IMG/VR virus record: IMGVR_UViG_3300028800_000001
Location: 124,001 to 188,000 of that record
Direction: 5' to 3' (one strand)
Length of the DNA: 64,000 bases
Shown here: positions 1 through 47,482 of the stretch, in pieces
Numbering within the stretch: position 1 is the stretch's first letter
Layout of the letters: every line of letters begins with the position of its first letter
Position numbers and translations under genes: made by a program
The notes under the pieces: generated by a model
The model's input: only the letters and a program-made list of their open reading frames with translations
The model's database searches: none
What the model was told of the DNA's origin: nothing

Positions 1-193
1 AGATGTGGATGGGCTTCCCACCCGTTTCCGCCTCCACTTGCTGCGCAATAGCAACTTTTCCGTCATTACGCAGCGATCCTACGAGATAGGTTCCCTTTTT
101 AATTTCTTCTCTGGCTATTTGTTGAAATTGAACCATACGGCCAGAACGTGCGGTAGAAGAGGAAGAGGTGGCATCATATTGTGTCATTTTGGT

Positions 194-550
194 TTACACT
201 TTCTTGAGTAATGAGAGTAGGAGATTGCGCTCCAATAATTGCTGAATTCTATCAACTGGCAATTTTAATTTGGTGATTGAAGATTTGAAGGTGAGCACTG
301 TCACCTTGTCCTTTTTAACCGTCATGCGGTCATATTCCGCAAGTCCGATATTCTCCTGATAACGCACGCCGTCGTCATCTTCGTATCCAACACCTACGGC
401 AAAGTCACCCTCAATAAAGAGAATAGCTTTCACCGCGTTCCCTAGCTCAAGTTCCGGCGTCTCGAAACGAAAGGTCGTTTCCCCTGTTTTTCCGTTCACG
501 TCCAATCGAATGAACGTGACTTCCATCTCTAACTTTTCATAATTACTCAT
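194..550 (-). CDS. hypothetical protein
   Basis: 118-aa ORF whose start overlaps the stop of the upstream gene; no motif recognised. Confidence 0.55.
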   Translation of the reverse strand: MSNYEKLEMEVTFIRLDVNGKTGETTFRFETPELELGNAVKAILFIEGDFAVGVGYEDDDGVRYQENIGLAEYDRMTVKKDKVTVLTFKSSITKLKLPVDRIQQLLERNLLLSLLKKV

Positions 551-869
551 TTAATTCTTCCTCGTTGGCATACATTTCTGCAAGCGCTGGCAGATGCTCA
601 GGCCGTACACACACAAGCTGTACTCCACATATATCGATTAGAAAGGCTGGATGCTTGTGTAAAATTTTAGCGTTATGGCAAAGCATTAATATGTCGTCTA
701 ACTTCATACTGATACTTTTGTTTTGGGTGGACTTGAGCTGATAGAGAAAACGCTCGTCCTCTCCATCCTCCGGTTCCACCCACGTATTGCCTGAACCGCG
801 TGTCGGTTTGACGCCTAACGCGTTCAGGACTTGCTTTTCGTATTTAAACTCATTTCTCTTCGATGCCAT
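543..869 (-). CDS. Hjc-like PD-(D/E)XK Holliday junction resolvase/endonuclease
   Basis: N-terminal YEK..LG..TRGSG, then EDG..LYQLKST; size and motif pattern match phage/archaeal Hjc-type nucleases. Confidence 0.6.
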   Translation of the reverse strand: MASKRNEFKYEKQVLNALGVKPTRGSGNTWVEPEDGEDERFLYQLKSTQNKSISMKLDDILMLCHNAKILHKHPAFLIDICGVQLVCVRPEHLPALAEMYANEEELNE

Positions 870-977
870 CTTTTTCCTCTTCTAAAAAGCGATCTCACTT
901 ACTATATTGCCCAAACGAAGAGGGAATATAATATTTTTCAAACGAATTTTCTAAAAAAGAAAAAAGAAATTAATTAA

Positions 978-1652
978 TTACGCCGCAAGCATCTCGCCAG
1001 GAGAAAAGGTGGTTTTTCGTACCGTTCCTAGAAACGTCCAACTCTGCGCCTGTACCCCATAGAGTGCCAAGTAAGGAATGCCGAGCGCGTCCTGGTAAAA
1101 CACTAAAAGACGTGCCTCACCGGACGTTTGCGCAAGAATAGTGAGCCCATCGACACGATCAGGGACACAGGCAGGCAGACGCGCAGGAATGATTGTTACC
1201 TTCTCTTTGTCACCAGCAGCAACGACAGAAGTACCATGAGACGCAAGACAATGTTCACCATCCGTTATTACTACAGAGACGTTGAGTGCCACGCCAACGC
1301 CAGTATTACGCAAAGTAAGCGGTTGATGCGTCCATTCAGTGAGTTTGAGATGACCGTAAGGGGTTACGAGCGGAGTCGCAGTAAGCATACCAACAGATTC
1401 GATGTGACTGACGCCAGAGGAAAAGAGATCAGTCATTTGATCGAGCGTTTCGTTGATGAACTTTTTGCCATACACGTGTGTATATACCATAAGCCCTACA
1501 GAGAAGAGAAATAAGCAGCAGACGAAATACACCAGGAAACTAATGCTCCCAGCCATGTTAAGAACTGAAAGCGTGACGAGTAGAGACAGGAAAAAGGCAG
1601 CGAAGAAGCAAACGAACGTAATAAGTAACCGATCATTATTTGGTGCTTCCAT
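978..1652 (-). CDS. membrane protein (two N-terminal TM helices, soluble beta-rich domain)
   Basis: hydrophobic stretches at about aa 9-60. Confidence 0.55.
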   Translation of the reverse strand: MEAPNNDRLLITFVCFFAAFFLSLLVTLSVLNMAGSISFLVYFVCCLFLFSVGLMVYTHVYGKKFINETLDQMTDLFSSGVSHIESVGMLTATPLVTPYGHLKLTEWTHQPLTLRNTGVGVALNVSVVITDGEHCLASHGTSVVAAGDKEKVTIIPARLPACVPDRVDGLTILAQTSGEARLLVFYQDALGIPYLALYGVQAQSWTFLGTVRKTTFSPGEMLAA

Positions 1653-1732
1653 TGATATTCTCCAGATGAAATTTACATACGATCACCTTTTACTTTCTTT
1701 TTAAAGACATGTACATTTAAGTGGAAAAGAAA

Positions 1733-2914
1733 CTACTTGGCTTGCTCTCGCGCCTGCCAGAGCCCAGCAAAGTATGCCAGTTCTCGAAATGCCTTGAAGA
1801 TCACCGCAGGGTTTGCCCCTGTTGATTTGCCTGCCTTACGCGGTAAATGCTTCACGCCCACCTCTGTGTAAGAATATCCAGCGCGGATAAACTTATAGAC
1901 CACTTCGGTAGACAGGAGCGCGCCCCGCGCCTCTATTTTCACTGATTGAAAATATTCGGTACGAAATAGTTTAAAGGCACAGTCAACATCTTTGATGGAG
2001 AGACCAAAGACAAACCGTACAACCCTATTCCAGCCCCAGGCATTTAGCTTGCGTATCCAGGGATCTTGTCGGTTCATACGATAGCCGAAGACACCATCGT
2101 ATGAGGAGAGAAGGGGAAGCATACTGTTTAAATCACGTATGTCAAATTGCCCATCAGCGTCCATATACATTGTATACTGTTTAGTTGCTTTTGAAAAGCC
2201 TGTAGCCAGCGCTCCACCGTATCCCTGATTCTTTTCGTGTGAATATAACTTCACACGTGGCTCAAACGTGGCAATACTTTTCACGACCCCTGCTGTGTTG
2301 TCACGAGAGCCATCATTGATCACAATAATCTCAAAGTCTTCCACCATACGCACCAGCGACCAGATACAAGCAGAGAGAAACTTTTGTACGTCTTTTTCTT
2401 GATCACGCACTACAACCACAAGAGAAAGCGTGAGTTCATGCTTTATTGTTCTTGGACGCCCTGGTATCATTTTATCCATACGTTCCTTCCCTACCACAAA
2501 GACACAAACAAGTAATGCAACAAAAGAAAATGCCATACAGAGTATCGCCACAAGCACCTTTACAAGTAGCGAATCAATACCGGCCCCTGTTACAGGAAGA
2601 ACTTTCATCACCATCGACAAAACACCTGTATTCAGTATCATATTTCCTCCAGTGACAAGCGTGAAGCGAGAAACTTGCTTCGTTGTAATTTTTCCTCGCT
2701 CCTGAAACGTCCAGAACTTATTACAGAAAAAGCTATTGATCGAAGCAATAAAGACTGCAATTGCATTATAGAAAAGCACTTTCCACCCTTCTGACGTAGG
2801 CCACATCCAGAGTAAAAAGTTTAAAGCTACAATATCAATGACTAAATTGATCGATCCAATGACCGAGAATTTTAAGATTTTTTTGAACATTTTTATTTTG
2901 GTAAAAACTACCAA
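1733..2914 (-). CDS. GtrA-like flippase domain fused to a polyprenyl-phosphate glycosyltransferase (GT2, DPM1/GtrB-like)
   Basis: N-half has 4 TMs with KFSVIG..N..SFFCNKFWTF (GtrA); C-half has INDGSRD, NQGYGGA, MDADGQF, DVDCAFKLF. Likely start is ATG 2890. Confidence 0.85.
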   Translation of the reverse strand: MVVFTKIKMFKKILKFSVIGSINLVIDIVALNFLLWMWPTSEGWKVLFYNAIAVFIASINSFFCNKFWTFQERGKITTKQVSRFTLVTGGNMILNTGVLSMVMKVLPVTGAGIDSLLVKVLVAILCMAFSFVALLVCVFVVGKERMDKMIPGRPRTIKHELTLSLVVVVRDQEKDVQKFLSACIWSLVRMVEDFEIIVINDGSRDNTAGVVKSIATFEPRVKLYSHEKNQGYGGALATGFSKATKQYTMYMDADGQFDIRDLNSMLPLLSSYDGVFGYRMNRQDPWIRKLNAWGWNRVVRFVFGLSIKDVDCAFKLFRTEYFQSVKIEARGALLSTEVVYKFIRAGYSYTEVGVKHLPRKAGKSTGANPAVIFKAFRELAYFAGLWQAREQAK

Positions 2915-5900
2915 TTCCCTTTGCCAGGATACTTACCGTTAAAACAATAAAGATGAGTACTTGAAATACTATCAGGGATGGGATTTTTAGGCAGCTTTGA
3001 AATCAGCCTCTTCTGAACGTACAAATTGGTAGATTGACCAAAAGCAACCAGAGAGAAGGAATTCTTGAATACTTTCGAATTAACGTCTATTAGCATAGGA
3101 TATCTTGCATCAGCGTTTCTCACCCCAACAATAACCCAATCAACATACAAGGAAGGATTCTTTAATGCTTTCGAAAGCACTTGGTTTGATCCAGAGTAAA
3201 TAATGTTTCTAAAATGTATGCCAACCACTTGCGATTCGTCTGGACTTTCAAGATATGTATCTTCAAGTATTGTTCCGCCGTTATAATGCTGCGAAAGATA
3301 GATATTCACATTTCTGGTTATATAGCAGCTCTGCCCATATTGACCATCCTCCAACGAAATAATTCCATTCTCAAAAATAAAAAAAGATTGCGCTACCAAT
3401 ACAATGCCAACAAGGAGATAAAGAACGTTCTTCGTAAAATTTCTTTTAAAGAAGCTAGCAAAAATTCCTAGACACATTGCAACAAAGAAACTCGCCGGTA
3501 AAACCGATTCGGTTCCAAAGCGAGCATTGAATAAGTCATTACTCACGCCAGGAACTAATATAACCACTTGACCAGTATAGAACGATATTGCGTAAAAAAG
3601 CAGCGGAGATAAAAAAGCAACTGAAGCAATGAATCTATTCGAAAGCCTTTCCTTTAAAAAGAAAGCGGCTAGACCAATTACTGAAAGCGTCGAAACAAGA
3701 ATCCCTATCGTGTCGTAACAAGCTAAAACATAATATCTAATATCTTGAACGATATTATGTTTTAGAATAGAAACTTGGTTTGGATAAAAATATTGCATCT
3801 GGTCTTGTGACGAATACGGCCCCTGCTGAAAGTAGAGAGCATTCCCAAATATTACTTTATTCCAAGCAAACCATAGAACAATACCAAGCCCTCCTATAAT
3901 ACAGAATATCAAAATGTCCGATTGTATTTCCTTCCAACTCTTCCTTTGTCTTATATCAATGAATAGCATCAAACATACAACAGAACCAAAAAGTACCCAC
4001 CCATCATATCTAGCTAGAGTGGCTAGAAAAGAAAAGATTGCAGTCAGAATAAGATATTTATATTTTCTCTCGGAGCCCCACAGTAAGAAAAAATATGCCG
4101 TTGCAGAAAATGCAGCAAAACAAACCGGCTCAGACAATGGCGTTGTCTGTAAGTATAGAACATTAGGATTAGTCAAAAAAACCAACACTCCAATAAAGCT
4201 CGCAATTCTGTTTCCAGTTACCATTGCGCAAGAAAAGAATAAAAATATTGCCGCTATAATATAACAAATCATCGAAGATATGCTACCTGCTAGTCCAGTC
4301 TTCCAAAGCCAATCGTTCCATATAAAAGGCAGCATAATCAAATGAGGTAAGGGGAGCCAAACTGTTCCTAATTGTCCAAACCCAGGAGTGGCACTATCAA
4401 TTACCGCACGAGCTATTCTCATATGCGAATAAGCATCATTATAGAGTAAAATATCCTGATGCAAAAAAGAATAAGTCGTAAAAGAAACGCTTAGAATTAT
4501 CGCCAGCAAAATAACTGCGTAAGATGAATAATCCTTAATCCTTACCTTTTTGCCAGTATGCTTTGCTTTCTTCATATCTTTGGTAATGGCTGCGCTCTGC
4601 ACCGTGGGCATTGCCAATATTTCTTCCGTGACGCTGCGCATGGCCCTGTACGACTGCGCTTTCTCCACCGGTACCAGATCTTGCGTGGTCACCGCACTAT
4701 GAAAAGCCGTATCCTCTTTGGCAAGCGCCACAATCTTATTGCTGGTCTCTTTCCACGCCTGATCAGGATCTTTGCCTGCAATATGCGTCCCGTGTCTCGT
4801 CTTCTCCCAATAATGGGGCTTCGTAATCAACTGAAAGAGTCCCTTGACCGCCGCTGCGCTAATCAGTAACCAATATACAGGCAACAACAGACACCACTTT
4901 ACGAGCTCGTAGCGCTCTCTATTCATACAGGCAATCATGGCAACATAGAGACAAAAAAGATTCCCAAAGATCAGGCATAACGTGCCCAGGTACAGAACCG
5001 GCGCTGGAAAGAGAATATGGTAAATTCCTTCGACATGACTTCTGAAAAAAAGATACACAAAGAACATGGCCCACATCAGAGGGTTGATGAAAAAGATCAC
5101 GGTGCCCACACCAATAATCCATTGCAACGAGAAAAAGGTTTTGATGCGGCTCTTCTTACGAAAGGTGTTGGTAGGATGGCGCGTTTGCACCAGGAAGGTT
5201 TGCATGTACCCTTTAATCCAGCGTGAGCGCTGACGCAGCCAGTTGCCGATATTGGCTGTTGCCTCTTCGTAGGTGGTGGAGGACAGCATTGCGGTCTTGA
5301 GTCCATACTGCGCAAGACGCATGCCCAGGTCGCAGTCTTCAGTCACATTGTACGAATCCCAGCCGCCAAGAGCGCGAAGGTACGTGGTTTGGAAATGATT
5401 GGATGTTCCACCAAGAGGAAGCGCAATACCAATACGCGACAACGCTGGCAGTATCATATCAAACCACACTGAGTATTCTATCGTGAAAAAGCGCGTAAGT
5501 AAAGATTGACGCGTATTGTAGAAGTTGAGTGACGCCTGCACACAGGCAACCTCTGGCCCGTGTTGCGCAAAGGTGAGTACGGCTTTCTTGAGTTGGGAAG
5601 GCTGAGGTACATCTTCCGCATCATAGATCACACAATACTGACCTTTAGCAAACATGAGGCCATAGTTACACGCACGTGGCTTTGTCCGTGGAGACCCCGT
5701 AGGGACGGAGACCACTGCGCAAAACGCTGGCAACGACAAGAGCGACATGGCCGTGTGCGTCTCTTTGTCGTCTTCTTCCAAAAGAAACAACACCTGGAGC
5801 TTATCTTTGGGATAATCCAGTTGCAACATCGCTCGTACATATTGCGGCACAATCTTGGCTTCTTTATAGAGTGGGCACAAAATGGTATAGGTCGGCCAAT

Positions 5901-6459
5901 CGGCACCATCAAGCGCCTCCACAATCTTATCGTCAATAGGTGTGACCGATTCTATGCCCTTTGGGCGTAACAATGCGTAGGCCAGGGTGCAAAGATGAAA
6001 GGTATACAGGAGAACGCAGAGCGCGCACAAGACCGAAAGCGTGGCAAGACCAAAGAAACCCAGGCACAGCGCAAGAACGGCAACCAGCAAACCAAGAAAT
6101 GTATATTGACCGGCTGTAATAGTGCGCAAGGCTGAAAGCTGCATGCGAAACGGGGCATAGGGATGAATTTGTTTTTCGCCAACGGTGAAGGTTTGATCAG
6201 CTATCTGCTTATAATCAAAGATTTCCTGATCTTGTCCATGACTGCTATAGCGCTGCGATTGTATCTTCAGCCAGTTGGCGTATTGTTCTAGTTCGCCACG
6301 CTGCGCTGGCGGAAAATCTTCTGACTTCCATTTACGATACTGCTGTTGCATATTCCCATATTCCCCATTTTTCAATTTAAATTTAGTTGCGTGTACCACG
6401 TCTTGATCGTTCGTGCGGCCTCTGTATTCTTTAACGAGAACGCACCGACATCGTCCCAT
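2908..6459 (-). CDS. processive GT2 glycosyltransferase fused to a GT-C (ArnT/PMT-like) membrane glycosyltransferase
   Basis: N-half has LCPLYKE, TKPRACNYG, YDAED, LGGTSNHF, VTEDCDLG, QRSRWIKG; C-half has DAYSHMRIAR, WLPLPHL, PLSEP, RYDGW and many TMs. The true start is probably downstream of 6459. Confidence 0.85.
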   Translation of the reverse strand: MGRCRCVLVKEYRGRTNDQDVVHATKFKLKNGEYGNMQQQYRKWKSEDFPPAQRGELEQYANWLKIQSQRYSSHGQDQEIFDYKQIADQTFTVGEKQIHPYAPFRMQLSALRTITAGQYTFLGLLVAVLALCLGFFGLATLSVLCALCVLLYTFHLCTLAYALLRPKGIESVTPIDDKIVEALDGADWPTYTILCPLYKEAKIVPQYVRAMLQLDYPKDKLQVLFLLEEDDKETHTAMSLLSLPAFCAVVSVPTGSPRTKPRACNYGLMFAKGQYCVIYDAEDVPQPSQLKKAVLTFAQHGPEVACVQASLNFYNTRQSLLTRFFTIEYSVWFDMILPALSRIGIALPLGGTSNHFQTTYLRALGGWDSYNVTEDCDLGMRLAQYGLKTAMLSSTTYEEATANIGNWLRQRSRWIKGYMQTFLVQTRHPTNTFRKKSRIKTFFSLQWIIGVGTVIFFINPLMWAMFFVYLFFRSHVEGIYHILFPAPVLYLGTLCLIFGNLFCLYVAMIACMNRERYELVKWCLLLPVYWLLISAAAVKGLFQLITKPHYWEKTRHGTHIAGKDPDQAWKETSNKIVALAKEDTAFHSAVTTQDLVPVEKAQSYRAMRSVTEEILAMPTVQSAAITKDMKKAKHTGKKVRIKDYSSYAVILLAIILSVSFTTYSFLHQDILLYNDAYSHMRIARAVIDSATPGFGQLGTVWLPLPHLIMLPFIWNDWLWKTGLAGSISSMICYIIAAIFLFFSCAMVTGNRIASFIGVLVFLTNPNVLYLQTTPLSEPVCFAAFSATAYFFLLWGSERKYKYLILTAIFSFLATLARYDGWVLFGSVVCLMLFIDIRQRKSWKEIQSDILIFCIIGGLGIVLWFAWNKVIFGNALYFQQGPYSSQDQMQYFYPNQVSILKHNIVQDIRYYVLACYDTIGILVSTLSVIGLAAFFLKERLSNRFIASVAFLSPLLFYAISFYTGQVVILVPGVSNDLFNARFGTESVLPASFFVAMCLGIFASFFKRNFTKNVLYLLVGIVLVAQSFFIFENGIISLEDGQYGQSCYITRNVNIYLSQHYNGGTILEDTYLESPDESQVVGIHFRNIIYSGSNQVLSKALKNPSLYVDWVIVGVRNADARYPMLIDVNSKVFKNSFSLVAFGQSTNLYVQKRLISKLPKNPIPDSISSTHLYCFNGKYPGKGNW

Positions 6460-7502
6460 CCCCAGAAGAAAGTCCCATGAATAAGTTCGTCTTTCGCGAC
6501 ATAACTGAGCGCCGCGTTCACCGCCCCTGCTTGCTCACTTTGATCTTCGGCTGTTGTACTCGTCTGTCTCCAGGGCTCAAAGAAAGAATCGGTGCTATCG
6601 CGGTAACCAATCTCAGAAATAATAAGCATCTTATGCACCCGCGCCGCGTACAGATCAAGTTGCTCCCCTACAGTGCTTGCCCACAGCGCCCCCATTTGTG
6701 CCGGATCAACTCTGTAGCCAGAAGAAATAATTGGAATGTACTCAGAGACGCCAATGTAGTCAAGCGAGGAAAACCAGGAAGGGGGGTTGTCTTCAAGGTT
6801 TCCCCAATTCGTATCATACGTCACCTTGCCTGAGAAGAGTGCGCGCACCTGCGCAATATACCTCTCCCATAAGTCAGTCTGCCCATTGTTTTGTAACCAT
6901 CCGGCCTCTGTACCCAACGAGAGCTGTTCTACGCGGTTCTGCTGTGCCACCTCGATATAAGGCGTGTAGAGTTTCTCAAACGCCGTAAACCATGTTTGCT
7001 CTTGTACGGTCGTATCAAAGGTAATGAGATTGGCCCAGCCACCAGTTGCGCGTGTCGTAAGTAGCGGAATAAGAAAAATATGATAGCCATGCGCATGCGC
7101 GGCTTTTACACCTGCCGTAAAGGTGGCAAGTGAAGGCGTCACATGATCAAAGAAAGAATTAGCGTTCTCTGCCTGCGAGAAAACCAGCGGCATTTCAATC
7201 CAGGCCGCACCCGTTTGCTCGTGAAGACTGCTCATGCTTTGCTGCCACCCTGTATCCTTTGACCCGTAGCCATCAGTGTTCCACCTGGGGTAGACCATAC
7301 CCGTTTGAAACGCTTGCGCGCTACTATAAGGAGTTGGTGTTGCAGTCGGAGAAGGGGAATGAAATACAGTGGGCTTTGGGGAAACCACACTGCCTACTTT
7401 GCGTTGTACCGGAAAATCGTCCAGCGATGCGGTACCAATGGCAATAAACGCTACGGCCACAATCGCTACAAAAAAGAGACGAAATACGATACCACTTTTC
7501 AC
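6372..7502 (-). CDS. membrane-anchored/secreted glycoside hydrolase, GH113-like TIM barrel
   Basis: signal/TM helix, Pro-Thr linker, LSLGTE (acid/base), FSGKVTYDTNW, LDYIGVSEY, ISEIGY (nucleophile). Confidence 0.7.
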   Translation of the reverse strand: MKSGIVFRLFFVAIVAVAFIAIGTASLDDFPVQRKVGSVVSPKPTVFHSPSPTATPTPYSSAQAFQTGMVYPRWNTDGYGSKDTGWQQSMSSLHEQTGAAWIEMPLVFSQAENANSFFDHVTPSLATFTAGVKAAHAHGYHIFLIPLLTTRATGGWANLITFDTTVQEQTWFTAFEKLYTPYIEVAQQNRVEQLSLGTEAGWLQNNGQTDLWERYIAQVRALFSGKVTYDTNWGNLEDNPPSWFSSLDYIGVSEYIPIISSGYRVDPAQMGALWASTVGEQLDLYAARVHKMLIISEIGYRDSTDSFFEPWRQTSTTAEDQSEQAGAVNAALSYVAKDELIHGTFFWGWDDVGAFSLKNTEAARTIKTWYTQLNLN

Positions 7503-7503
7503 T

Positions 7504-8157
7504 TTACGTTTCTTCCTCTAATAAATTTTCATTTTGCGCGGCGACTAACCCAATGCACGCGGCTTCGGCTGAATCATGGTCAACGAGCATTCCGAAGACC
7601 TGTTCGATGTACCAGACCGAGAGCCCCTTGTCACTGAGCTCTCTACCAGGGGCACGCGAAAAGAGCGCTTCTTTCCAGTCTTTTGTATCAAGAGAATAGA
7701 CTGGAATGCCAAGTTTACGCGCTGAATGCACAATAAACCCATTGAGCTTCGCCAGGGATTCGACTGTTGGCAGTGAAATCCCTGTCTTCCGCTCTTTACC
7801 CACGACGCGTCCACCCACCTTGACAGCTCTTTCGTAGTTGGAAAAGAGACGCACCCGCTCTATAACCACCATACACGGCTTGTATTTCAGGCACCACTCA
7901 TGTGTCACCTGTGCAACAATTTCGCGCTTTTCCCACGGCTCCAACTTCTTTTGATCGCTGAAATCAATACAACCAATCTTGATCAACTGAAGCTGCGGAT
8001 CAAGTACCGCAATCCCTGTGCGCTCATTACTCTGGTCAAACGCCAGAATATTCCCCCCGTACTCTATGGAACGTTTCTTTTTGGTACGAGTAACACGACT
8101 ACTAGAACGGGTGCTCATCAGGCTCCTTATCTTCTCCTCCGAAGGCTGCGCGATCAT
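7504..8157 (-). CDS. ruvC: RuvC-like Holliday junction resolvase
   Basis: ILAFDQS..TGIAV, VVIER, DHDSAEAACIG. Confidence 0.7.
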   Translation of the reverse strand: MIAQPSEEKIRSLMSTRSSSRVTRTKKKRSIEYGGNILAFDQSNERTGIAVLDPQLQLIKIGCIDFSDQKKLEPWEKREIVAQVTHEWCLKYKPCMVVIERVRLFSNYERAVKVGGRVVGKERKTGISLPTVESLAKLNGFIVHSARKLGIPVYSLDTKDWKEALFSRAPGRELSDKGLSVWYIEQVFGMLVDHDSAEAACIGLVAAQNENLLEEET

Positions 8158-8647
8158 TTAAGAACACGTAAAGATAATAGCGCACCATATCGTAATCCAA
8201 CTTGGGCAGCAGGAGGCGTGACAAAAACAGGAAACGCTCTTTCGTGTCTACATCCTCTAGCACAATCTTATCGTTATGGAATCCAACAGTACTATAGCCA
8301 ATGGTTTGCGCTGTAATATTTAAGAGACGCATTGCCAGATGTTCTTTATTTTCCTCTGGCTGTAGGTGCGCTTTGAATTTATTGAAGTCTTCTGTTAATG
8401 CCGAAAGTTTCTCAGTACGGCGCGGTTTTTGCGTATACGGCTGTGGCGATCCCAGCGTTGGCGTCTTGTACGGAAGTGGTGCTGCCGGAATATAATTATC
8501 GTACTCCCGCTGTATCAAAATTGGCTCGATCTGTCCGTATTCGTTGATCTGTTCCTTCATAATTTCTTGCAGTTTTTCCATGTACTGCCGCTTCAATGGA
8601 TCGTCTGAGTTCTCGTAGTCCATCGCTTTGCTCCCATTCAATTTCAA
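8102..8647 (-). CDS. hypothetical protein
   Basis: ORF with a GGAG RBS before MDYENS; no motif recognised. Confidence 0.55.
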   Translation of the reverse strand: MKLNGSKAMDYENSDDPLKRQYMEKLQEIMKEQINEYGQIEPILIQREYDNYIPAAPLPYKTPTLGSPQPYTQKPRRTEKLSALTEDFNKFKAHLQPEENKEHLAMRLLNITAQTIGYSTVGFHNDKIVLEDVDTKERFLFLSRLLLPKLDYDMVRYYLYVFLNDRAAFGGEDKEPDEHPF

Positions 8648-8836
8648 TTACATCACTATTTCGATAAGGGGAACCGAAGAATTTGTCGGCACGCGCTGGA
8701 TGCACTGGGCACAAATCTTCTCGTTCATCGGCACGCGTATCTAGAAAGAAGCGTTCCCACTCTTCTTCTGTGAACAGTTCTACGTAGTATGGTCGTCTCG
8801 CGTTACGAGCGTCCAGACAACTTTTGAAGATGCGTC

Positions 8837-9571
8837 TCATGACCACTCCCAAATCAGCATTAAGCGCAAATCCCTTCTGCGTACAAAAAGCCCAAGATGG
8901 CGAAAGAGCCAGAGCGCGGTCTTTGCCCATTCATCGAACTCACCGAAGAACGCGTAACGCTGATGATTACGGATATCCTGTTTGAGTCGATTGAGTGCGC
9001 GCAAATCAATGGCTTTGAGCACTTCACGTGTCACCCGCTCTGGATGATTCTGTTGGAAGAAGAGTAGCGTTTTGAGCGCCTTCCCCTCTGGCGACCATTC
9101 CACGTCATCAAGTGTCAACGATGGCAACTCTTGAAAGCCAGGCTGCTGATACTTTTTCTCTAGCGAGCAGAGTGCATAGCGCAGATGATCATGCTCAATG
9201 CTGAGTGCCCCACCTATTTTATAGCCATAGAGCCCCGCAACGCCATACTCGCCGCTGCTGTATTGAAAGACTTCGTGAAACGGGTGCGCATTGCCCTCGC
9301 GATCCGTAAGATGATTGTACAGTGTCATCTGATCAAGATACATGTTTAGTTGCAGTAAATCTTTTTGCTCACGCGCCGCGTGCATTTGCTCATATGTTGG
9401 TTTCTCTGGTCTGGGTACCAGATCCTCCATTTTCTCCCATAGCGGTAGCTCGTCTTTTGAGACGTAGCATGGATACCCCATGAACTGCGGTTGCGGTACA
9501 GGGTATCCATCTTCATTTACAGGAAAATCATGCACGCCGCATATCAGTTGAAAATGCGGTCGGATTCCCAT
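8837..9571 (-). CDS. hypothetical protein
   Basis: 244-aa ORF in operon orientation. Confidence 0.6.
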   Translation of the reverse strand: MGIRPHFQLICGVHDFPVNEDGYPVPQPQFMGYPCYVSKDELPLWEKMEDLVPRPEKPTYEQMHAAREQKDLLQLNMYLDQMTLYNHLTDREGNAHPFHEVFQYSSGEYGVAGLYGYKIGGALSIEHDHLRYALCSLEKKYQQPGFQELPSLTLDDVEWSPEGKALKTLLFFQQNHPERVTREVLKAIDLRALNRLKQDIRNHQRYAFFGEFDEWAKTALWLFRHLGLFVRRRDLRLMLIWEWS

Positions 9572-9615
9572 CTAGTTCTTTCCTTTTTTATATTTGAGCA
9601 TTTCTTGCGTCTCTA

Positions 9616-9858
9616 TTAGTGAATGACACTCGACTGCCCACCAGTTGAAACGGCATTCACCGTCAACGTGTTGGGTGTAAAGCTCCACGTCCACTGGCCC
9701 ACAGTAAAGCGCTCCTGGCAGTAGACGCAAATCTGATAGACATTGAGCGGTACTGCGGTGTCATCCACCTCTGGCGTATACGCACCGCCTGCTGCTGCGT
9801 CAAACCAGAAGGTTGCGCGCCCATCCTGAGCTCCACAAATTTCACAAAAAGGTGGCAT
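9616..9858 (-). CDS. small Cys-containing (CxxC...CxxC) hypothetical protein
   Basis: CEIC and CVYC pairs. Confidence 0.5.
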   Translation of the reverse strand: MPPFCEICGAQDGRATFWFDAAAGGAYTPEVDDTAVPLNVYQICVYCQERFTVGQWTWSFTPNTLTVNAVSTGGQSSVIH

Positions 9859-9923
9859 TGTTTTCTCTCTTTCTGGATAGTAAACAACTGATCGTGATGA
9901 TCATTTTCTTTTTGCATGAATAT

Positions 9924-10847
9924 TTATAAAGCATAAACTTCCCGCTCTTCAGGCTTCGCAAAGCAAACCGTACGTAGTGGGCACTTAATGGCGCGGTCAC
10001 TCTTGCTATCGCTGCACACCAGGAGGCGTTCCGGCACCAACTTCTTTTTGCGATAAATCTTAATCAACTTCTTGACGTTATTCAATTTCAGAATATAGGG
10101 CTCTGCCATCTGCGGATCATACGTTCTCACCCACGTACGGAAGTGCTGATCTCCTTTATTCTCGATTAAGATGATGGCTTTTGAAATCCCCAACATATGC
10201 ATATAGAGATTTGCCTGGACTGCTGCTTTTTTAAACTCAGGATTTTCCATCGGATTAGCACGCTTGAGAATATCATCAAAGGTTGTCTTGCTATACCCCT
10301 TGATTTCCACCACATAGCGTTCAAACTCATTGTTTTTGTTGCGTGGCTTTGGAATACGAATAAGTGCATCAGGCGTAAACGACAAGCCCCACTCATCTAC
10401 ATAATGACTCTTTTCCACTTCGTCGGCAATACCAGAGATAGCCCCAAAGAGAAATTGCCACTTATCACGCAGTGAATGATCCTTGACTTGCTGTATCTCT
10501 GGCATAAGCAGCGGAAGCAATTCTTGTTCGTCACGCGCTATAAGTGCCTGTTCAAATTGTGCCTCAAGAGCACTGCGCTGTGCTTCATCGAGCTCCATCG
10601 TGAACAAATCTTGCCATTTTTCATGCGTAATCCAGCCATCTAAGAAAATGGCACATAGGTGCGCGGTATTCTCGGAAACTTCTCGCTTATAAAAGGTGCC
10701 AAAGACATGCTCTCTATAGCAGAAATCCAGATCATTGAGGATGGAGGAGGCATGTAAGCCTCCTCGCGGTCCTTCACGCGTATTCCACGTGACGAAGAGT
10801 TGCTCAAGCACGCGCTGAATGTAATCGTCTTCAGTGAGCGTGATCAT
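9924..10847 (-). CDS. PD-(D/E)XK Cas4/RecB-like exonuclease
   Basis: FTPDAL, VVEIKG, QANLYM; Cys residues at both ends (FC...C..C..C..C) suggest an Fe-S staple; adjacent to recA. Confidence 0.7.
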   Translation of the reverse strand: MITLTEDDYIQRVLEQLFVTWNTREGPRGGLHASSILNDLDFCYREHVFGTFYKREVSENTAHLCAIFLDGWITHEKWQDLFTMELDEAQRSALEAQFEQALIARDEQELLPLLMPEIQQVKDHSLRDKWQFLFGAISGIADEVEKSHYVDEWGLSFTPDALIRIPKPRNKNNEFERYVVEIKGYSKTTFDDILKRANPMENPEFKKAAVQANLYMHMLGISKAIILIENKGDQHFRTWVRTYDPQMAEPYILKLNNVKKLIKIYRKKKLVPERLLVCSDSKSDRAIKCPLRTVCFAKPEEREVYAL

Positions 10848-11917
10848 GCAACATCCTCCTCGCCCTCTTCTTCTCCGGCCACAACACGTTTACGTTTCTT
10901 ACGGAAGCCTGCGGCCTCACGCAAACTGTCAAGAATGTCAGGTACTTCTTCCGGTGTCACAAAGCCACGATCATAAATGAAGGGAAGGACAGCGCGCCCA
11001 CGCGGCTTGGATACCTTACTCTTCACAATACGGATAGCCGTGTATTGGCCGTATTCACCGATCTTGTCATCTTCTAACACGCCTTTGCGTCCGGTCTGGA
11101 TGCGCAAACTGGCAAAGTGTTTGAGTGCATGCCCACCTGGACTATCCAGTGGATTGCCAAACACCATACCAACCTTACTGCGCATCTGATTGACGATAAT
11201 AAAGATGGTACCAGAGTCAGCACAGGCCGCATTGATAATAGGAAGCTTTGAAGAGAGCAAGCGCGGTATAAGCGCCATACTATCAGACTTCTCAAAGTTC
11301 TCATTTTCAAGCACTGCTTTGGGTGTCATCGCCATCAAACTATCAAGAATGATGAGCGCGACCCCCGCCTTTGCCCACGTCCAGATCAGTTCAAGCGTAG
11401 CTTCCGCCGTATCAGGATTGGCAAGTACCAGATTTTTGCTATCGACCAAACCAAGCTCTTCTAACCGGTCTTCATCCAGCGTGCGTTCTGCGTCCACATA
11501 AAGGACTTGCGGCACGCGTGGGATGAGATGCGCCATAAGCGAAGACTTCCCAGTGGACTCTTCACCAAAGACCTCAATGATTTTACCGAGCGGCAACCCG
11601 CCACCAATGACGCTGTCCAGATCATCAATACCCGTTGGAATACGTGGCATCTCAATGTCTTCACGCTCTCCCAGGCGATAAATGCGCCCCTTCCCATACT
11701 TCTTCTTGCCTTGCAAAAGAAGCTCCTCAATCACATGCTCTTTGACTACTTTGAGCTTCACGGGAGCCGAAGCAATTTCTTTCTTCAGCATTTTCTCCAT
11801 TGGCGTGCCGTCTTCTTCCTCCTCAAGCAGCTCTTCGGTATCCTCGTAGCTCATCTCCAACATGGAAGCGGTCTTTGCGGTTTCCACATCAAGCTTCTTT
11901 GGCATTTTTCTTCTCAC
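10844..11917 (-). CDS. recA: RecA recombinase (phage-encoded)
   Basis: IPTG..DLD..IGGGLPLGKIIEVFGEESTGKS (Walker A), IILDS (Walker B), VNQMRSKVG, PGGHALKHFAS, KSKVSKP. Confidence 0.95.
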   Translation of the reverse strand: MRRKMPKKLDVETAKTASMLEMSYEDTEELLEEEEDGTPMEKMLKKEIASAPVKLKVVKEHVIEELLLQGKKKYGKGRIYRLGEREDIEMPRIPTGIDDLDSVIGGGLPLGKIIEVFGEESTGKSSLMAHLIPRVPQVLYVDAERTLDEDRLEELGLVDSKNLVLANPDTAEATLELIWTWAKAGVALIILDSLMAMTPKAVLENENFEKSDSMALIPRLLSSKLPIINAACADSGTIFIIVNQMRSKVGMVFGNPLDSPGGHALKHFASLRIQTGRKGVLEDDKIGEYGQYTAIRIVKSKVSKPRGRAVLPFIYDRGFVTPEEVPDILDSLREAAGFRKKRKRVVAGEEEGEEDVA

Positions 11918-12212
11918 TTTCTAATGCGTGCGCCGCCGCGTCTTCTCCGTAAATTGCATCGTATTCAGAGGTATCAAAAGCACCATCCACGATACGCAAA
12001 CGGAGCGTTATTGCGCCATCAAGCGCAGGGATGTAGCTGTCCTTCGTCTCCTCGACTGTCCAGCGCGCCCAATTGCGGATATAGTCATCCTCTATCGTTT
12101 CGCCATCATAGGACGAGGCCGCATGCTTTGTGAGCAAAAACAATTGCTCCACCAGTTCACTCTTTTTCATGACATACCTCCGCTTTCTCGTAGCATGGTT
12201 CGCTACATACAA
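11889..12212 (-). CDS. hypothetical protein
   Basis: ORF in operon; likely start MKKSELV. Confidence 0.5.
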   Translation of the reverse strand: MYVANHATRKRRYVMKKSELVEQLFLLTKHAASSYDGETIEDDYIRNWARWTVEETKDSYIPALDGAITLRLRIVDGAFDTSEYDAIYGEDAAAHALESEKKNAKEA

Positions 12213-30766: not shown

Positions 30767-32119
30767 ATGATCGCCTGTCCTGGTTGTGCCACAACCGCAC
30801 GCGCAACCGCGAAATATTGTCAAACGTGCGGTGCATCCCTTACCGCCACAGGAAATCTCACCGGTATCCTGGCTGGAAAGTACCTCATCACTGGTGTTCT
30901 TGGACAAGGTGGTATGGGAGCCGTCTACAAAGCGCTGGATAGCACCATCAATCGTGTCGTTGCGATCAAAGAGATGAGCCAGAGCACGCTGGTTGGACTG
31001 GAATATCAAAAAGCGGTCACCGCATTTAAAAATGAAGCGCGCCTACTTGGAAACCTTCGTCATCCAATGCTACCTGCTATCTACGAGAACTTCACGGAAA
31101 ACGGACGTTGGTATCTGGCAATGGAATATATCGAAGGCAAAACGCTTGAAGACGTAATGCACACGCCTGATCTGGCTGCGCTGCTACGTTATGGCCCACA
31201 GCTTTGCGATGTACTCACTTTCTTGCATACTCAAAATATCACCTTTCGCGATATCAAACCAGCCAATATCATGATTACGCCAGAGGACGAAGTACGTCTG
31301 ATCGACTTTGGGATTGCACGCTTCTTTGCGGCCAACACCAAAGATACCAGCGCTCTTGGCTCGCCTGGATATGCGGCCCCTGAGCAGTACAAAAAGGGCT
31401 CTGAACCAAAGAGTGATGTCTATGCACTTGGCGCGCTCTTTCATTTTTTACTCAGTGGCACTGATCCTTCTGATGCCCCATTTCAGTTTGTGTCACTACC
31501 AAAGGTAACACATCCAGCGCTTCTGCGTCTCAATCGCTTAGTGGAAGAAATGATTACGCTGGACAAAGCGAACCGACCTGATAGTTTCGCTGTCCAGGCA
31601 CGATTGATCAGCATTCGCGATGACTATCGCAGCAATCCAATGATTGCCGCACCAAAGGCTGATGCCACCGTGTTTCTCATTTCCTCCATGTTAGACGGCA
31701 AAACCGAGAAGGATAAAATGCTCTTGGAACGTCTTGAGAAATCAATTGTCCTGGTTGGAAAAATGCGTGGCAAAACCATTGCCTGTGAATACATCGCACC
31801 AACAGTGAAAGAAGTAGAACGCATCATGCGCGAGAGCGGCATTATCCTGGTTGTCTGTACTCCGGCAATCCTTACCAACGAATATGCGAGCGAAGCTGTG
31901 AACACAGCCATTGAGTACCGTACCAATCACCGTGATGAAGTACTCGTTGTTCCTATCTATGGAAAACAATGTGAGTGGGGAAAAAACTATCTCTACCTCA
32001 AAAATTATGCAGGTGGCCCAAGGGACCGCAAACCAATTGTACGTTCTAGCGGCTACAGCGACGAAGCGCTCAATGAGATTGGGTTGACCGTCTATCAAGT
32101 CCTAGAGGAGAAATTTTAA
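30767..32119 (+). CDS. Hanks-type Ser/Thr protein kinase with N-terminal zinc ribbon and C-terminal TIR-like domain
   Basis: CPGC...CQTC; GQGGMGAVY, AIKEM, FRDIKPANIM, DFG, GSPGYAAPEQ, SDVYALG; C-terminal flavodoxin-like pattern VFLISS..LERLEK..IILVVCTPAIL..Y..VVPIY (TIR call less certain). Confidence 0.9.
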   Translation: MIACPGCATTARATAKYCQTCGASLTATGNLTGILAGKYLITGVLGQGGMGAVYKALDSTINRVVAIKEMSQSTLVGLEYQKAVTAFKNEARLLGNLRHPMLPAIYENFTENGRWYLAMEYIEGKTLEDVMHTPDLAALLRYGPQLCDVLTFLHTQNITFRDIKPANIMITPEDEVRLIDFGIARFFAANTKDTSALGSPGYAAPEQYKKGSEPKSDVYALGALFHFLLSGTDPSDAPFQFVSLPKVTHPALLRLNRLVEEMITLDKANRPDSFAVQARLISIRDDYRSNPMIAAPKADATVFLISSMLDGKTEKDKMLLERLEKSIVLVGKMRGKTIACEYIAPTVKEVERIMRESGIILVVCTPAILTNEYASEAVNTAIEYRTNHRDEVLVVPIYGKQCEWGKNYLYLKNYAGGPRDRKPIVRSSGYSDEALNEIGLTVYQVLEEKF

Positions 32120-46030: not shown

Positions 46031-46042
46031 GTAGTACCCCTT

Positions 46043-47482
46043 CTAATCGGCAAGCCAAATATAGGTAGGCGCGGCACCTGAATAAGTAATGACAAAAGAT
46101 TGGCGCGCTGGCACACGATACGGTACGCCTGCCGTGGGCACACTGCCGACGTTTGTACCACCGATAGTAAATGCCGTCATCGTATTAATGGCCGTGAAGA
46201 TAATTTGAATATCATTCTGGCTACTGTTTCCCGTAAAAGGTGAGGCACCAATAGCAGTCGGTGTGATAGATCCGCGAGGATTATATCCAATGCAACTCCT
46301 CACAATTTGTGGTGTACCTGCAAACGTAGTGCTTGGCGTGTTACCGGTTCCTGCGAAATGACAGCCAAAGAAATATCCTCTGTGATTGGTATCATTGATC
46401 GCGTTCGTGACGAGTCCTGCACCAGAGCCAACAGGGCTTTGAAAGATGCACCCTTCAAAATAACTGTTTCCTGCGCTTTGGCTATCGTTCACTTCGTACG
46501 CAGTCGTATTGCTCTGATTGTTGGTGGCCCAGTTGCAGTCTTTAAACGTAATTGGCCCACCTGTACCTGAAATATTCACACCATCAGCATTCGAGTGTTT
46601 AAAGAGCATACTAGTGAATTTAATATTATTCGCAGCCGTAATCTGTACGGCCTGATTGCCGTTTTGTGCCACACCACCAATAAAGGTGATATTGTTGGGA
46701 TCAGCGCTTCCGGTTTCAACCAGAATTGTTGGACTCACGGTTCCGGTCGTGATCATACCTACGTCAATATTTATTATGGTGTTGCTAGCTCCACCCTTAA
46801 TATGAATAGCGGAACCGGATACAGAGCCACCGGCAACGGCCCCTCCAACATTGGTCAACTGACAGTCGTTAATATCCTCCAAGAAAAAACCATCACCATT
46901 GTCAATGACTTCCAAGAGAATATCAGAGAGCAGATTTTGCCCAACAAAGTTTGAGCCAGTCACCCCCTTAATATGAATGCCTTGTGCGCAGTGATTGATG
47001 TGGATCGCGTGCATGATAGCTGCCACATTGTTGACGCCTGCGGTGCCAATGCTCTCTATGGCCCAGCCATTCATATAATAGATCTGCAAGCCAGAAAGAT
47101 ATGCGATGCGTGCGCCGGTTATTTCAATACCATTAGCGGCTGGATTGCCAGAGGAGGTAGAATTGGCATACTTAATATAAAGATCACGCACCCCACAACC
47201 ATCAGCCGTAATGCCGATAATTTGCGCACCGCTAAAACCGGCTGTCGGTCGCAGAATGGTTCCTGGCCCTGCACCAACTATATGCGTATTTGCGGTAGAG
47301 AGCGAAAGTGGCGAAGATATTTGATACGTACCAACAGGGAGAAGAACAGTGCCACCCGCAGAGGCAGCAGTAATCGCGGCTGCAATGGCCGTCGTATCAT
47401 CGGTCACACCATCGCCAGCCGCGCCGTATTGTTTCGCATTGTAATAAATGGGAGGGACAAGCGCTGTAAAAGCCATACACAT
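46043..47482 (-). CDS. tailspike/depolymerase-like right-handed beta-helix protein
   Basis: NAKQYGAAGDGVTDDTTAI..A..GGTVLLPVGTY (pectate lyase 3-type start), parallel beta-helix repeats. Confidence 0.8.
   Translation of the reverse strand: MCMAFTALVPPIYYNAKQYGAAGDGVTDDTTAIAAAITAASAGGTVLLPVGTYQISSPLSLSTANTHIVGAGPGTILRPTAGFSGAQIIGITADGCGVRDLYIKYANSTSSGNPAANGIEITGARIAYLSGLQIYYMNGWAIESIGTAGVNNVAAIMHAIHINHCAQGIHIKGVTGSNFVGQNLLSDILLEVIDNGDGFFLEDINDCQLTNVGGAVAGGSVSGSAIHIKGGASNTIINIDVGMITTGTVSPTILVETGSADPNNITFIGGVAQNGNQAVQITAANNIKFTSMLFKHSNADGVNISGTGGPITFKDCNWATNNQSNTTAYEVNDSQSAGNSYFEGCIFQSPVGSGAGLVTNAINDTNHRGYFFGCHFAGTGNTPSTTFAGTPQIVRSCIGYNPRGSITPTAIGASPFTGNSSQNDIQIIFTAINTMTAFTIGGTNVGSVPTAGVPYRVPARQSFVITYSGAAPTYIWLAD

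What the first reader, a model, noticed from the sequence alone, without database searches (positions are those of the whole stretch)
1733..7502. Phage-borne three-gene glycan pathway with two unusual fusions (GT2+GT-C; GtrA+GT2) and a GH113-like hydrolase
Seen: overlapping, co-oriented genes encode an anchored GH113-like enzyme, an ~1150-aa processive GT2 (QxxRW, TED) fused to an ArnT/PMT-like GT-C, and a GtrA flippase fused to a polyprenyl-P glycosyltransferase. Known: GtrA/GtrB plus a GT-C is the serotype-conversion architecture of phage Gtr operons; a synthase plus a secreted hydrolase is the Bcs/Pga architecture; related YDAED-type GT2s include NfrB, which makes the N4 receptor glycan. 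Inference: the cluster both polymerises a glycan and decorates it with lipid-carried sugars. This is a hybrid Gtr-plus-synthase system, embedded among recombination genes, that could remodel the host surface (receptor masking, biofilm).
Basis: partly seen in the sequence, partly recalled or inferred. Interest (0 to 1): 0.72.

Follow-up and report, generated by a model that had tools for sequence, protein, structure and literature searches.

The report
Jumbo phage carries host glycan operon
A 327-kb soil phage carries an intact, selectively maintained copy of a three-gene cell-surface sugar-polymer operon from its likely hosts (Ktedonobacteria), so the fused enzymes are real but are a borrowed, uncharacterised host system, not a phage invention.

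Summary
On the minus strand, three tightly packed genes encode a membrane-anchored GH113-like hydrolase (6372-7502), an 1147-aa protein joining a processive GT2 synthase to a GT-C glycosyltransferase (2908-6351), and a GtrA domain fused to a polyprenyl-phosphate-type GT2 (1733-2890).

The window lies in a complete 327-kb phage genome with terminal repeats. Phage recombination genes flank the cluster. Independent metagenome contigs span the long gene without indels or joints, so it is not a chimera.

The fusions are not unusual. Each has thousands of full-length homologues. The same gene order occurs in chromosomes of Ktedonobacteria (Chloroflexota), and the phage protein nests inside that clade.

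Other phyla carry the same four catalytic modules in different fusion combinations, which argues for a single pathway.

The likely mechanism is this:
- The synthase half makes and exports a beta-linked glycan.
- The GtrA~GT2 protein supplies a lipid-linked sugar.
- The GT-C half adds that sugar outside the membrane.
- The hydrolase trims or releases the chain.

The sugar identity and the benefit to the phage are unknown. A related phage keeps the module, and 35 of 40 listed strain differences are synonymous. I rate it a new variant of a known kind, of moderate interest.

The parts
6372..7502 (-). GH113-like glycoside hydrolase, 376 aa. It has an N-terminal hydrophobic anchor or signal (aa 1-30) and a Pro/Thr/Ser-rich linker. 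The predicted catalytic Glu pair is E199 (nt 6906-6908) and E297 (nt 6612-6614).
   Evidence: Pfam PF22612, E 7.6e-29. PDB endo-beta-1,4-mannanases 4cd6/3civ, E 4e-9. E199 and E297 are invariant in 24 homologues. Hydropathy profile. Coordinates verified.
4792..6351 (-). N-terminal half of the 1147-aa fusion (aa 1-520): two N-terminal TM helices, a cytoplasmic GT2 (GT-A) domain, then further TM helices. This is a processive synthase type. Motifs: DAED nt 5611-5622, TED nt 5335-5343, QRSRW nt 5218-5232.
   Evidence: Pfam PF13632/PF13641. NCBIfam CelA E 1e-23 and PgaC E 3.4e-19, both far below cut-off. Foldseek matches to BcsA, hyaluronan synthases, chitin synthases and PcManGT, and to YdaM, CslA/CslC and IcaA. 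The motifs are invariant in 28 homologues.
4531..4791 (-). Low-confidence, net-positive linker (aa 521-607) between the synthase and GT-C halves, predicted to be cytoplasmic.
   Evidence: pLDDT below 50 over aa 544-569. K+R = 18 against D+E = 12, which fits the positive-inside rule. The cytoplasmic location is an inference.
2908..4530 (-). C-terminal half of the fusion (aa 608-1147): a multi-pass GT-C fold glycosyltransferase with a C-terminal soluble domain. Invariant Asp D639 (nt 4435-4437) lies at the start of the first external loop.
   Evidence: Model m767e09ee3105; the top 45 PDB hits are all GT-C. TMEM260 and ArnT lead in AFDB. PMT_2 matches 17 of 28 homologues, while the window copy is sub-threshold at E 0.0013. 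NCBIfam LA_3751/2 putative glycosyltransferase, E 2.9e-7. D639, H643, R648 and D652 are invariant.
1733..2890 (-). GtrA~GT2 fusion, 385 aa. The GtrA-like four-helix membrane domain is at about nt 2498-2872. The cytoplasmic polyprenyl-phosphate glycosyltransferase-type GT2 domain is at about nt 1805-2425.
   Evidence: Pfam PF04138 E 4.1e-15 and PF00535 E 2.7e-27. PDB matches to ArnC, DPMS and GtrB (sll0501). PHROG 841, GtrB-like, E 2.4e-24. There are 3380 hits, and the best are full-length at up to 53% identity.
7504..8157 (-). Upstream flanking phage gene, a RuvC-like Holliday junction resolvase. Its stop codon lies one base from the hydrolase start.
   Evidence: PHROG 1770, E 3.5e-8. ORF map.
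978..1652 (-). Downstream flanking phage gene of unknown function (224 aa). A related phage fragment has the same gene in the same position.
   Evidence: L089 is collinear with window 3-2881 at 55-92% amino-acid identity. No Pfam or PHROG match.

Best explanation
The three genes are a phage-borne, functional copy of a conserved chromosomal operon of Ktedonobacteria (Chloroflexota) that builds a cell-envelope glycan.

Proposed mechanism:
1. The cytoplasmic GT2 domain of the large protein polymerises a beta-linked glycan from a host nucleotide sugar. It threads the chain through its own transmembrane channel, as BcsA, hyaluronan synthase and chitin synthase do.
2. The GtrA~GT2 protein transfers a single sugar onto polyprenyl phosphate at the cytoplasmic face, and its GtrA-like membrane domain helps that lipid-linked sugar reach the outer face.
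3. The GT-C half, tethered to the synthase by a cytoplasmic linker, uses that lipid-linked sugar outside the membrane. It most plausibly decorates the emerging polymer.
4. The membrane-anchored GH113-like hydrolase trims, releases or remodels the chain, as BcsZ does for cellulose.

Shown here: domain identities, intact catalytic motifs, host origin, conserved synteny, module co-occurrence and fusion permutations, and purifying selection in phage populations.

Inferred: the topology, the acceptor of the GT-C half, the sugars used, and the benefit to the phage. Candidate benefits are changing or maintaining the host surface during infection, for example to block superinfection or to stop progeny sticking to debris.
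For: Domains and motifs.

The genes belong to the phage:
- The record is a complete virus genome of 327 kb with terminal repeats.
- The window holds tape measure, prohead protease, primase, Pol III alpha and RecA genes.
- A related phage in another sample keeps GH113 plus the fusion (L094, 64% identity) and GtrA~GT2 plus the same downstream phage genes (L089, 65-70%).

Not a chimera: a 37.8-kb contig and, from a different sample, a 4.1-kb contig cover nearly all of the fusion gene, including the junction between its halves, with no indel and no joint.

Under selection: 35 of the 40 listed strain differences are synonymous.

Host origin:
- Identical gene order on cellular contigs next to NADH dehydrogenase genes (L090-L092), and in L099-L102.
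- 40 of 81 genomes sampled from the class have strong matches.
- The phage protein nests in the Ktedonobacteraceae/Chloroflexota clade with SH-aLRT support of 99.

One pathway:
- The GT-C is fused, adjacent or within 8 kb in 26 of 47 well-flanked loci from several phyla.
- Alternative fusions occur: [GT2~GT-C~GH5] next to the synthase in L082, and [GT2~synthase] next to the GT-C in L014.

The phage has no nucleotide-sugar genes, so it depends on host pools.
Against: - No member of the family has been characterised, so the polymer, the lipid-linked sugar and the GT-C acceptor are all unknown.
- No literature on this system was found in the library searched.
- The window's GT-C half is below the Pfam PMT_2 cut-off (19.4 against 26.1 bits).
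- No sequence match rises above family-superfamily level for sugar specificity. The structural neighbours span glucan, mannan, GlcNAc and glycolipid synthases at similar scores.
- Many host loci have the fusion without GH113 or without the GtrA domain, so the three-gene form is only one variant.
- The complex prediction for the GT-C half with GtrA~GT2 gave no answer.
- The host is inferred only from gene phylogeny.
Confidence: 0.6

Rival explanations
1. The GT-C half is a protein (or lipid) glycosyltransferase, like PMT/TMEM260 O-mannosyltransferases or ArnT, fed by the GtrA~GT2 protein. It is fused to the synthase only for co-localisation, so two separate products are made.
For: The best AFDB structural neighbours are the protein O-mannosyltransferase TMEM260 and the lipid A-modifying ArnT. 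Pfam PMT_2 is the only family that matches. Some host loci hold the fusion plus a polyprenyl-P GT2 but no hydrolase.
Against: The synthase, GT-C, polyprenyl-P GT2 and a clan GH-A hydrolase are repeatedly fused in different combinations (L082, L014) and are linked across phyla. That pattern fits one product better than two. Fold similarity among GT-C enzymes does not predict the acceptor.
Confidence: 0.2
2. The synthase-like half is not a long-chain polymerase. It makes a glycolipid or short lipid-anchored primer (as the MGlcDG synthase or PcManGT do), which the GT-C half extends outside. The result would be a lipoglycan analogous to lipomannan.
For: The only PDB sequence match of the N-half is the archaeal mannosyltransferase PcManGT, E 1.2e-5. 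PcManGT and the MGlcDG synthase are among the structural neighbours. No PilZ domain or co-polymerase partner was detected.
Against: The full D, D, D, TED and QxxRW motif set is invariant. The strongest fold matches are BcsA and hyaluronan synthases with channel helices. A dedicated endo-acting hydrolase family is linked to the synthase.
Confidence: 0.12
3. The cluster is host DNA wrongly joined to a phage contig, or decaying cargo with no function in the phage.
For: All three genes have their closest relatives in bacteria. The GT-C half has a lower GC content than the rest of the window (38.9% against 47%).
Against: - Phage genes lie directly on both sides.
- A related phage has the same junctions.
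- Contigs from several samples span the region.
- Identity to any host copy is only about 50%.
- All catalytic residues are intact.
- 35 of 40 strain differences are synonymous.
Confidence: 0.03

Closest known systems
Synthase-dependent exopolysaccharide systems (BcsA/BcsZ cellulose, PgaC/PgaB PNAG, B. subtilis YdaM operon)
   Same: A membrane-embedded GT2 with D,D,D,QxxRW motifs and its own channel, paired with an extracytoplasmic glycoside hydrolase in one operon. BcsA leads the PDB structural matches and YdaM leads the AFDB Swiss-Prot matches.
   Different: There is no PilZ or c-di-GMP module and no BcsB/PgaD-type partner. The hydrolase is GH113-like and not GH8/GH153. A GT-C enzyme is fused to the synthase, and a lipid-linked sugar arm is added. 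NCBIfam scores are far below the equivalog cut-offs.
Three-component extracytoplasmic glycosylation systems (phage GtrA/GtrB/Gtr(type); ArnC/ArnT; CsbB/GtcA/YfhO; Ppm1/Pmt)
   Same: A GtrA-family membrane domain, a polyprenyl-phosphate GT2 and a GT-C transferase are encoded together.
   Different: GtrA is fused to the GT2, and the GT-C is fused to a polymer synthase. The cluster is not next to an integrase or att site. The likely host is a Chloroflexota bacterium, not an enterobacterium with O-antigen. The acceptor is unknown.
GT2 synthase plus GH113 loci predicted for ManNAc-type polymers (C. difficile 630 locus; E. coli NfrB/NGR)
   Same: A BcsA-like GT2 is linked to a GH113 hydrolase. This was noted for C. 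difficile in PMC7710045. NfrB is a GT2 that makes a phage-receptor glycan (PMC8669472, listed).
   Different: The phage has no WecB epimerase or deacetylase. The NfrB-type model scores only 25 bits against a cut-off of 431. Those systems have no GT-C or GtrA arm.
Chlorovirus hyaluronan and chitin synthases
   Same: A large virus encodes a processive membrane GT2 synthase that acts in the infected cell. Chlorella virus HAS is among the top structural matches. The biology of a virus-made surface polymer is from my own knowledge.
   Different: Those are eukaryotic algal viruses with single synthase genes. Here a bacterial jumbo phage carries a whole host-type operon and, in addition, a second synthase-hydrolase pair.
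Pyrococcus DPMS and other GT2 enzymes with a GtrA_DPMS_TM domain
   Same: A polyprenyl-phosphate GT2 is joined in one chain to a GtrA-like four-helix membrane domain (Pfam PF04138, named for both; PDB 5mlz matched).
   Different: The domain order here is membrane domain first. Identity is low, and no equivalog model is reached.

Membership tests
Glycoside hydrolase family 113 (Pfam PF22612) | Domain score over the curated cut-off | tested here: met
   101.4 bits against a cut-off of 27. All 120 listed homologues carry PF22612.
Glycoside hydrolase family 113 (Pfam PF22612) | Two catalytic glutamates of clan GH-A (acid/base and nucleophile) | tested here: met
   E199 (in GTE) aligns with the Glu of the GCEM motif in AaManA. 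E199 and E297 (in SEIGY) are invariant in 24 sequences. Their catalytic roles are inferred.
Glycoside hydrolase family 113 (Pfam PF22612) | Endo-beta-1,4-mannanase activity | not testable with these tools
   Identity to solved mannanases is low and E is only 4e-9. The substrate is unknown.
Processive membrane GT2 synthases (BcsA/HAS/Chs type) | D, DxD, TED and QxxRW motifs | tested here: met
   DAED 244-247, TED 337-339 and QRSRW 374-378 are all invariant in 28 homologues.
Processive membrane GT2 synthases (BcsA/HAS/Chs type) | GT-A domain packed on channel-forming transmembrane helices | tested here: met
   Foldseek probability 1.0 to BcsA, CvHAS, XlHAS1 and Chs1 over about 500 columns. TM by hit is 0.70-0.75 to YdaM and IcaA.
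Processive membrane GT2 synthases (BcsA/HAS/Chs type) | Membership of a named equivalog (CelA, PgaC/IcaA, NfrB-type) | tested here: not met
   CelA 83 bits against 699; PgaC 69 against 422; NF011307 25 against 431.
GT-C glycosyltransferase superfamily | GT-C membrane fold | tested here: met
   The top 45 PDB hits are all GT-C, with TM 0.43-0.54 and probability 1.0. AFDB hits are TMEM260, ArnT and ALG12.
GT-C glycosyltransferase superfamily | Conserved acidic residue in the first extracytoplasmic loop | tested here: met
   D639 is invariant and lies just after the first TM helix of the half (helix 608-631). Its location outside the membrane is inferred from topology.
GT-C glycosyltransferase superfamily | Pfam PMT_2 (GT39/GT83-like) score over the cut-off | tested here: inconclusive
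   The window copy scores 19.4 bits against a cut-off of 26.1. Of 28 homologues, 17 match, with a best E of 1.2e-9.
GT-C glycosyltransferase superfamily | Use of a polyprenyl-phosphate-linked donor | not testable with these tools
   Only genetic linkage to a polyprenyl-P-type GT2 supports it.
GtrA family (PF04138) | Domain score over the cut-off | tested here: met
   56.4 bits against 26.1, and 59.2 bits in the genome scan.
Polyprenyl-phosphate glycosyltransferases (GtrB/ArnC/DPMS type GT2) | Sequence similarity to solved members and to phage GtrB families | tested here: met
   ArnC E 1.6e-13, DPMS 2.5e-7 and GtrB sll0501 3e-7. PHROG 841 E 2.4e-24.
Polyprenyl-phosphate glycosyltransferases (GtrB/ArnC/DPMS type GT2) | Membership of a named equivalog | tested here: not met
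   The best match is ArnC-type NF007986, 58.6 bits against a cut-off of 529.
Phage Gtr serotype-conversion cassette | Three separate genes gtrA, gtrB and gtr(type) | tested here: not met
   GtrA is fused to the GT2, and the GT-C is fused to a synthase.
Phage Gtr serotype-conversion cassette | Location beside the integrase/attachment site of a temperate phage | tested here: not met
   The only integrase-family gene is at genome position 39.6 kb. The cluster is at 125.7-131.5 kb, among recombination genes.
Phage Gtr serotype-conversion cassette | Modification of O-antigen | not testable with these tools
   The inferred host class is Ktedonobacteria. The acceptor is unknown.

The most novel reading that the evidence does not exclude
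A bacterial jumbo phage carries a complete, working envelope-glycan factory, plus a second PgaC-like synthase/GH18 pair, and uses them to rebuild the surface of the infected Ktedonobacteria cell. That would be a prokaryotic counterpart of the chlorovirus hyaluronan and chitin coats. The borrowed system would itself be an undescribed, widely distributed machine in Chloroflexota, Dormibacterota, Patescibacteria and Actinomycetota, in which a channel-forming synthase is physically coupled to a GT-C enzyme that decorates the nascent chain with lipid-carried sugars.
Probability: 0.35. Interest if true: 0.75.

Novelty: new variant of a known kind. Interest (0 to 1): 0.58.

Why it matters
Phage glycan genes are usually single glycosyltransferases or Gtr cassettes. 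Here a whole host operon with a processive synthase sits in a jumbo phage and is kept under purifying selection. I found no counterpart in 50,697 GenBank phage records, in PHROGs, or, beyond one weak hit, in IMG/VR.

The phage copy also draws attention to a cellular system that seems uncharacterised. It occurs in about half of the Ktedonobacteria-class genomes sampled. Its four catalytic modules are shuffled by gene fusion across several poorly studied phyla, which makes a testable case for coupled synthesis and extracytoplasmic decoration of a wall polymer.

Tried and rejected
- Near-identity DNA search of window 1-12000 against GenBank phages: no match.
- Single-protein scans of viral and genome contigs found nothing. 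The alignment-based scans did work.
- The IMG/VR scan gave only one weak GT2 hit, L084 at 33% identity.
- tblastn of the fusion against GenBank phages gave only partial GT2-domain hits of 21-27% identity, several of them in records that are really bacterial. The hydrolase gave none.
- PHROGs has no family for the hydrolase or the fusion.
- The promoter and terminator scan was no better than shuffled sequence.
- No tRNA genes in the window.
- Literature searches for a described GT2~GT-C system, for Ktedonobacteria wall glycans, or for jumbo phages with polysaccharide synthases found nothing relevant. The one useful item was the C. difficile GT2/GH113 remark.
- The complex prediction of the GT-C half with GtrA~GT2 gave 'no answer' and is not used as evidence.
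- Assigning the sugar from structural neighbours was rejected. Glucan, mannan, GlcNAc and glycolipid synthases score alike.
- A first attempt to centre a taxon search on a locus id failed and was redone through a genome handle.

Full report
**What is there.** Three co-oriented ORFs lie on the minus strand of window 1733-7502.
- The first in transcription order (6372-7502, 376 aa) matches Pfam GH113 (E 7.6e-29) and solved endo-beta-1,4-mannanases (E 4e-9). It begins with a hydrophobic anchor followed by a Pro/Thr/Ser-rich linker. Two glutamates, E199 and E297, sit at the positions expected for a clan GH-A catalytic pair. They are invariant in 24 homologues.
- The second ORF is 1183 aa at its longest. 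The database gene call (P0001, 1147 aa) and the onset of homology point to the ATG at 6351. That start removes the apparent 88-nt overlap with the hydrolase gene.
- The third ORF matches GtrA_DPMS_TM (aa 15-139) and Glycos_transf_2. It also matches solved ArnC, DPMS and GtrB enzymes and the phage GtrB-like family PHROG 841. Its likely start is the ATG at 2890. Public gene callers cut it to 302 aa (P0121). Homologues covering 99% of the 385-aa form, and a 384-aa conserved frame in a related phage, show that the long form is right.

**The long protein.**
- Residues 150-520 match GT2 synthase models. They carry DAED, TED and QRSRW, and all three motifs are invariant in 28 full-length homologues.
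- A full-length AlphaFold model (pLDDT 75, pTM 0.72) matches BcsA, chlorovirus and Xenopus hyaluronan synthases, chitin synthases and PcManGT. Among reviewed proteins it matches B. subtilis YdaM, plant CslA/CslC and IcaA/PgaC.
- The C-terminal half, modelled alone (pLDDT 77.7), returns only GT-C enzymes in the first 45 PDB matches. TMEM260 and ArnT lead in AFDB Swiss-Prot. Pfam PMT_2 matches 17 of 28 homologues but is sub-threshold in the window copy.
- An invariant Asp (D639) follows the first helix of this half, where GT-C enzymes keep their catalytic acid.
- The linker between the halves is disordered and net positive, so it is probably cytoplasmic. That would place the GT2 domain inside the cell and the GT-C loops outside. 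This topology is inferred.

**Phage or host DNA?**
- The window is positions 124,001-188,000 of a 327,295-bp virus record with direct terminal repeats.
- It holds a tape measure protein, a prohead protease, primase, Pol III alpha, a Dam methylase and RecA.
- The cluster is bracketed by a RuvC-like resolvase and, further upstream, a Cas4-like exonuclease and RecA.
- Two short contigs from another sample are collinear with both edges of the cluster at 64-70% protein identity. They include the downstream phage ORFs, so a related phage keeps the module.
- The sequence occurs in at least eight rhizosphere metagenomes.
- A 37.8-kb contig from one run and a 4.1-kb contig from another together cover the fusion gene without indel or joint. 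This rules out an assembly chimera.
- Of 40 listed differences between these strains, 35 are synonymous and the other five are conservative. The genes are therefore under purifying selection in the phage.

**Where it came from.**
- The fusion gave 2128 hits, and almost all of the best 120 are full length at 44-51% identity. Those that carry names are from Ktedonobacteraceae. The GtrA~GT2 fusion gave 3380 hits. The hydrolase gave 122, again with Ktedonobacteraceae names.
- The same order, GH113 -> fusion -> GtrA~GT2, lies on cellular contigs next to NADH dehydrogenase genes (L090-L092). It also lies in four of 20 loci taken from genomes of the class (L099-L102).
- Other loci in the class have GH113 plus the fusion, the fusion plus a GH5 enzyme, or a polyprenyl-P-type GT2 directly upstream.
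- 40 of 81 genomes sampled from the class have strong matches, often as several paralogues. One of those 40, G058, is unpublished.
- In a maximum-likelihood tree the phage protein sits inside the Chloroflexota/Ktedonobacteraceae clade, sister to a small subclade with SH-aLRT 99, on a long branch.
- The cluster is thus an old acquisition of a host operon. The host class is inferred from this evidence alone.

**One pathway.**
- Among 47 genome loci with at least 5 kb on both sides of the synthase, 26 have the GT-C fused, adjacent or within 8 kb.
- In a Dormibacterota genome the synthase is followed by an 1100-aa protein that joins a polyprenyl-P-type GT2, the GT-C and a GH5 domain (L082).
- In another genome, L014, the GT2 is fused to the front of the synthase and the GT-C follows as a separate gene.
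- Four catalytic modules that recur in different fusion combinations are most simply read as parts of one machine.

**Mechanism proposed** (confidence 0.6 overall; about 0.9 for identity and origin, about 0.5 for the chemistry).
1. The synthase makes and exports a beta-linked glycan from a host nucleotide sugar. The phage has no nucleotide-sugar genes of its own.
2. The GtrA~GT2 protein loads polyprenyl phosphate with a sugar and helps it across the membrane.
3. The tethered GT-C transfers that sugar to the nascent chain outside.
4. The anchored hydrolase trims or releases the chain.

Rival readings:
- The GT-C glycosylates proteins or lipids instead of the polymer.
- The N-half makes a glycolipid primer for a lipoglycan.

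The sugars cannot be assigned. A mannan-like backbone is suggested only weakly, by the GH113 or GH5 partners and the CslA neighbours. Why the phage keeps the operon is open. Surface remodelling against superinfection, or upkeep of the wall during a long infection, are both plausible and both untested.

**Comparison with known systems.** It works like a synthase-dependent exopolysaccharide system joined to a three-component Gtr/Arn-type glycosylation system. It is not a member of Bcs, Pga, NfrB or the enterobacterial Gtr cassette, because all the equivalog models score far below their cut-offs, there is no PilZ domain, the genes are fused, and the cluster is not near the one integrase-like gene. 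A GT2 synthase with a GH113 neighbour has been noted in C. difficile (PMC7710045). The closest viral analogy is the chlorovirus hyaluronan synthase, which is among the structural matches.

**Verdict.** The carriage of a full synthase operon by a jumbo phage, together with a second PgaC-like synthase/GH18 pair in the same window, appears rare among known phages. I rate it a new variant of a known kind, interest about 0.58.

Noticed in passing
window 58514-61357 (minus strand): A second synthase-plus-hydrolase module. It runs GH18-like (60239-61357), then a 129-aa ORF (59857-60246), then a PgaC/IcaA-like GT2 synthase (58514-59857; TIGR03937 E 1.8e-54, below cut-off). The synthase is 62-64% identical to genes in 3 of 41 Ktedonobacteria-class genomes. 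One of those has a GH18 neighbour in a different gene order.
   Followed up: partly
L082:7509-12469 and L014:7110-10935: Alternative fusions of the same modules in other phyla. L082 has an 1100-aa [polyprenyl-P-type GT2 ~ GT-C ~ GH5] protein next to a stand-alone synthase. L014 has a 749-aa [GT2 ~ synthase] protein next to a stand-alone GT-C.
   Followed up: partly
L090:10296-13460, L092:9431-12649, L003:15575-19288: Host operons are often followed by a 1050-1240-aa PQQ beta-propeller protein. No such gene was found in the phage genome.
   Followed up: partly
window 2908-4791: The linker plus GT-C half has 38.9% GC, against 49% in the synthase half and 47% in the window. Host homologues show a dip of at most about 5 points and one shows none, so the dip is only partly a family feature.
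   Followed up: partly
window 1733-2914: Public gene calls shorten the GtrA~GT2 gene to 302 aa (300 aa in the related phage) by choosing an internal ATG. This removes most of the GtrA domain.
   Followed up: yes
window 41999-47482 (minus strand): A 1343-aa protein with Laminin_G_3 domains and a 479-aa protein with a pectate-lyase-like fold lie near the head protease gene. They may be tail fibres or glycan depolymerases, and so may be relevant to which surface glycan the phage binds.
   Followed up: no
window 30767-32119 (plus strand): A phage-encoded Ser/Thr protein kinase (Pkinase E 2.6e-40). Kinase genes also lie beside two host copies of the fusion, L002 and L003.
   Followed up: no
G000:C1:39586-40038 (outside the window): The phage genome has a single tyrosine-recombinase (Phage_integrase) family gene, about 86 kb from the cluster. 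It could mean a temperate lifestyle or only dimer resolution.
   Followed up: no
window 1733-7502 in runs X1-X10: The phage occurs in at least eight separate rhizosphere metagenome samples, with strain divergence of about 1%.
   Followed up: partly
G001 contigs C34, C85, C87: One Ktedonobacteraceae genome has three paralogous copies of the fusion and three GH113-like genes. Two of the GH113-like genes are adjacent to a fusion copy.
   Followed up: no
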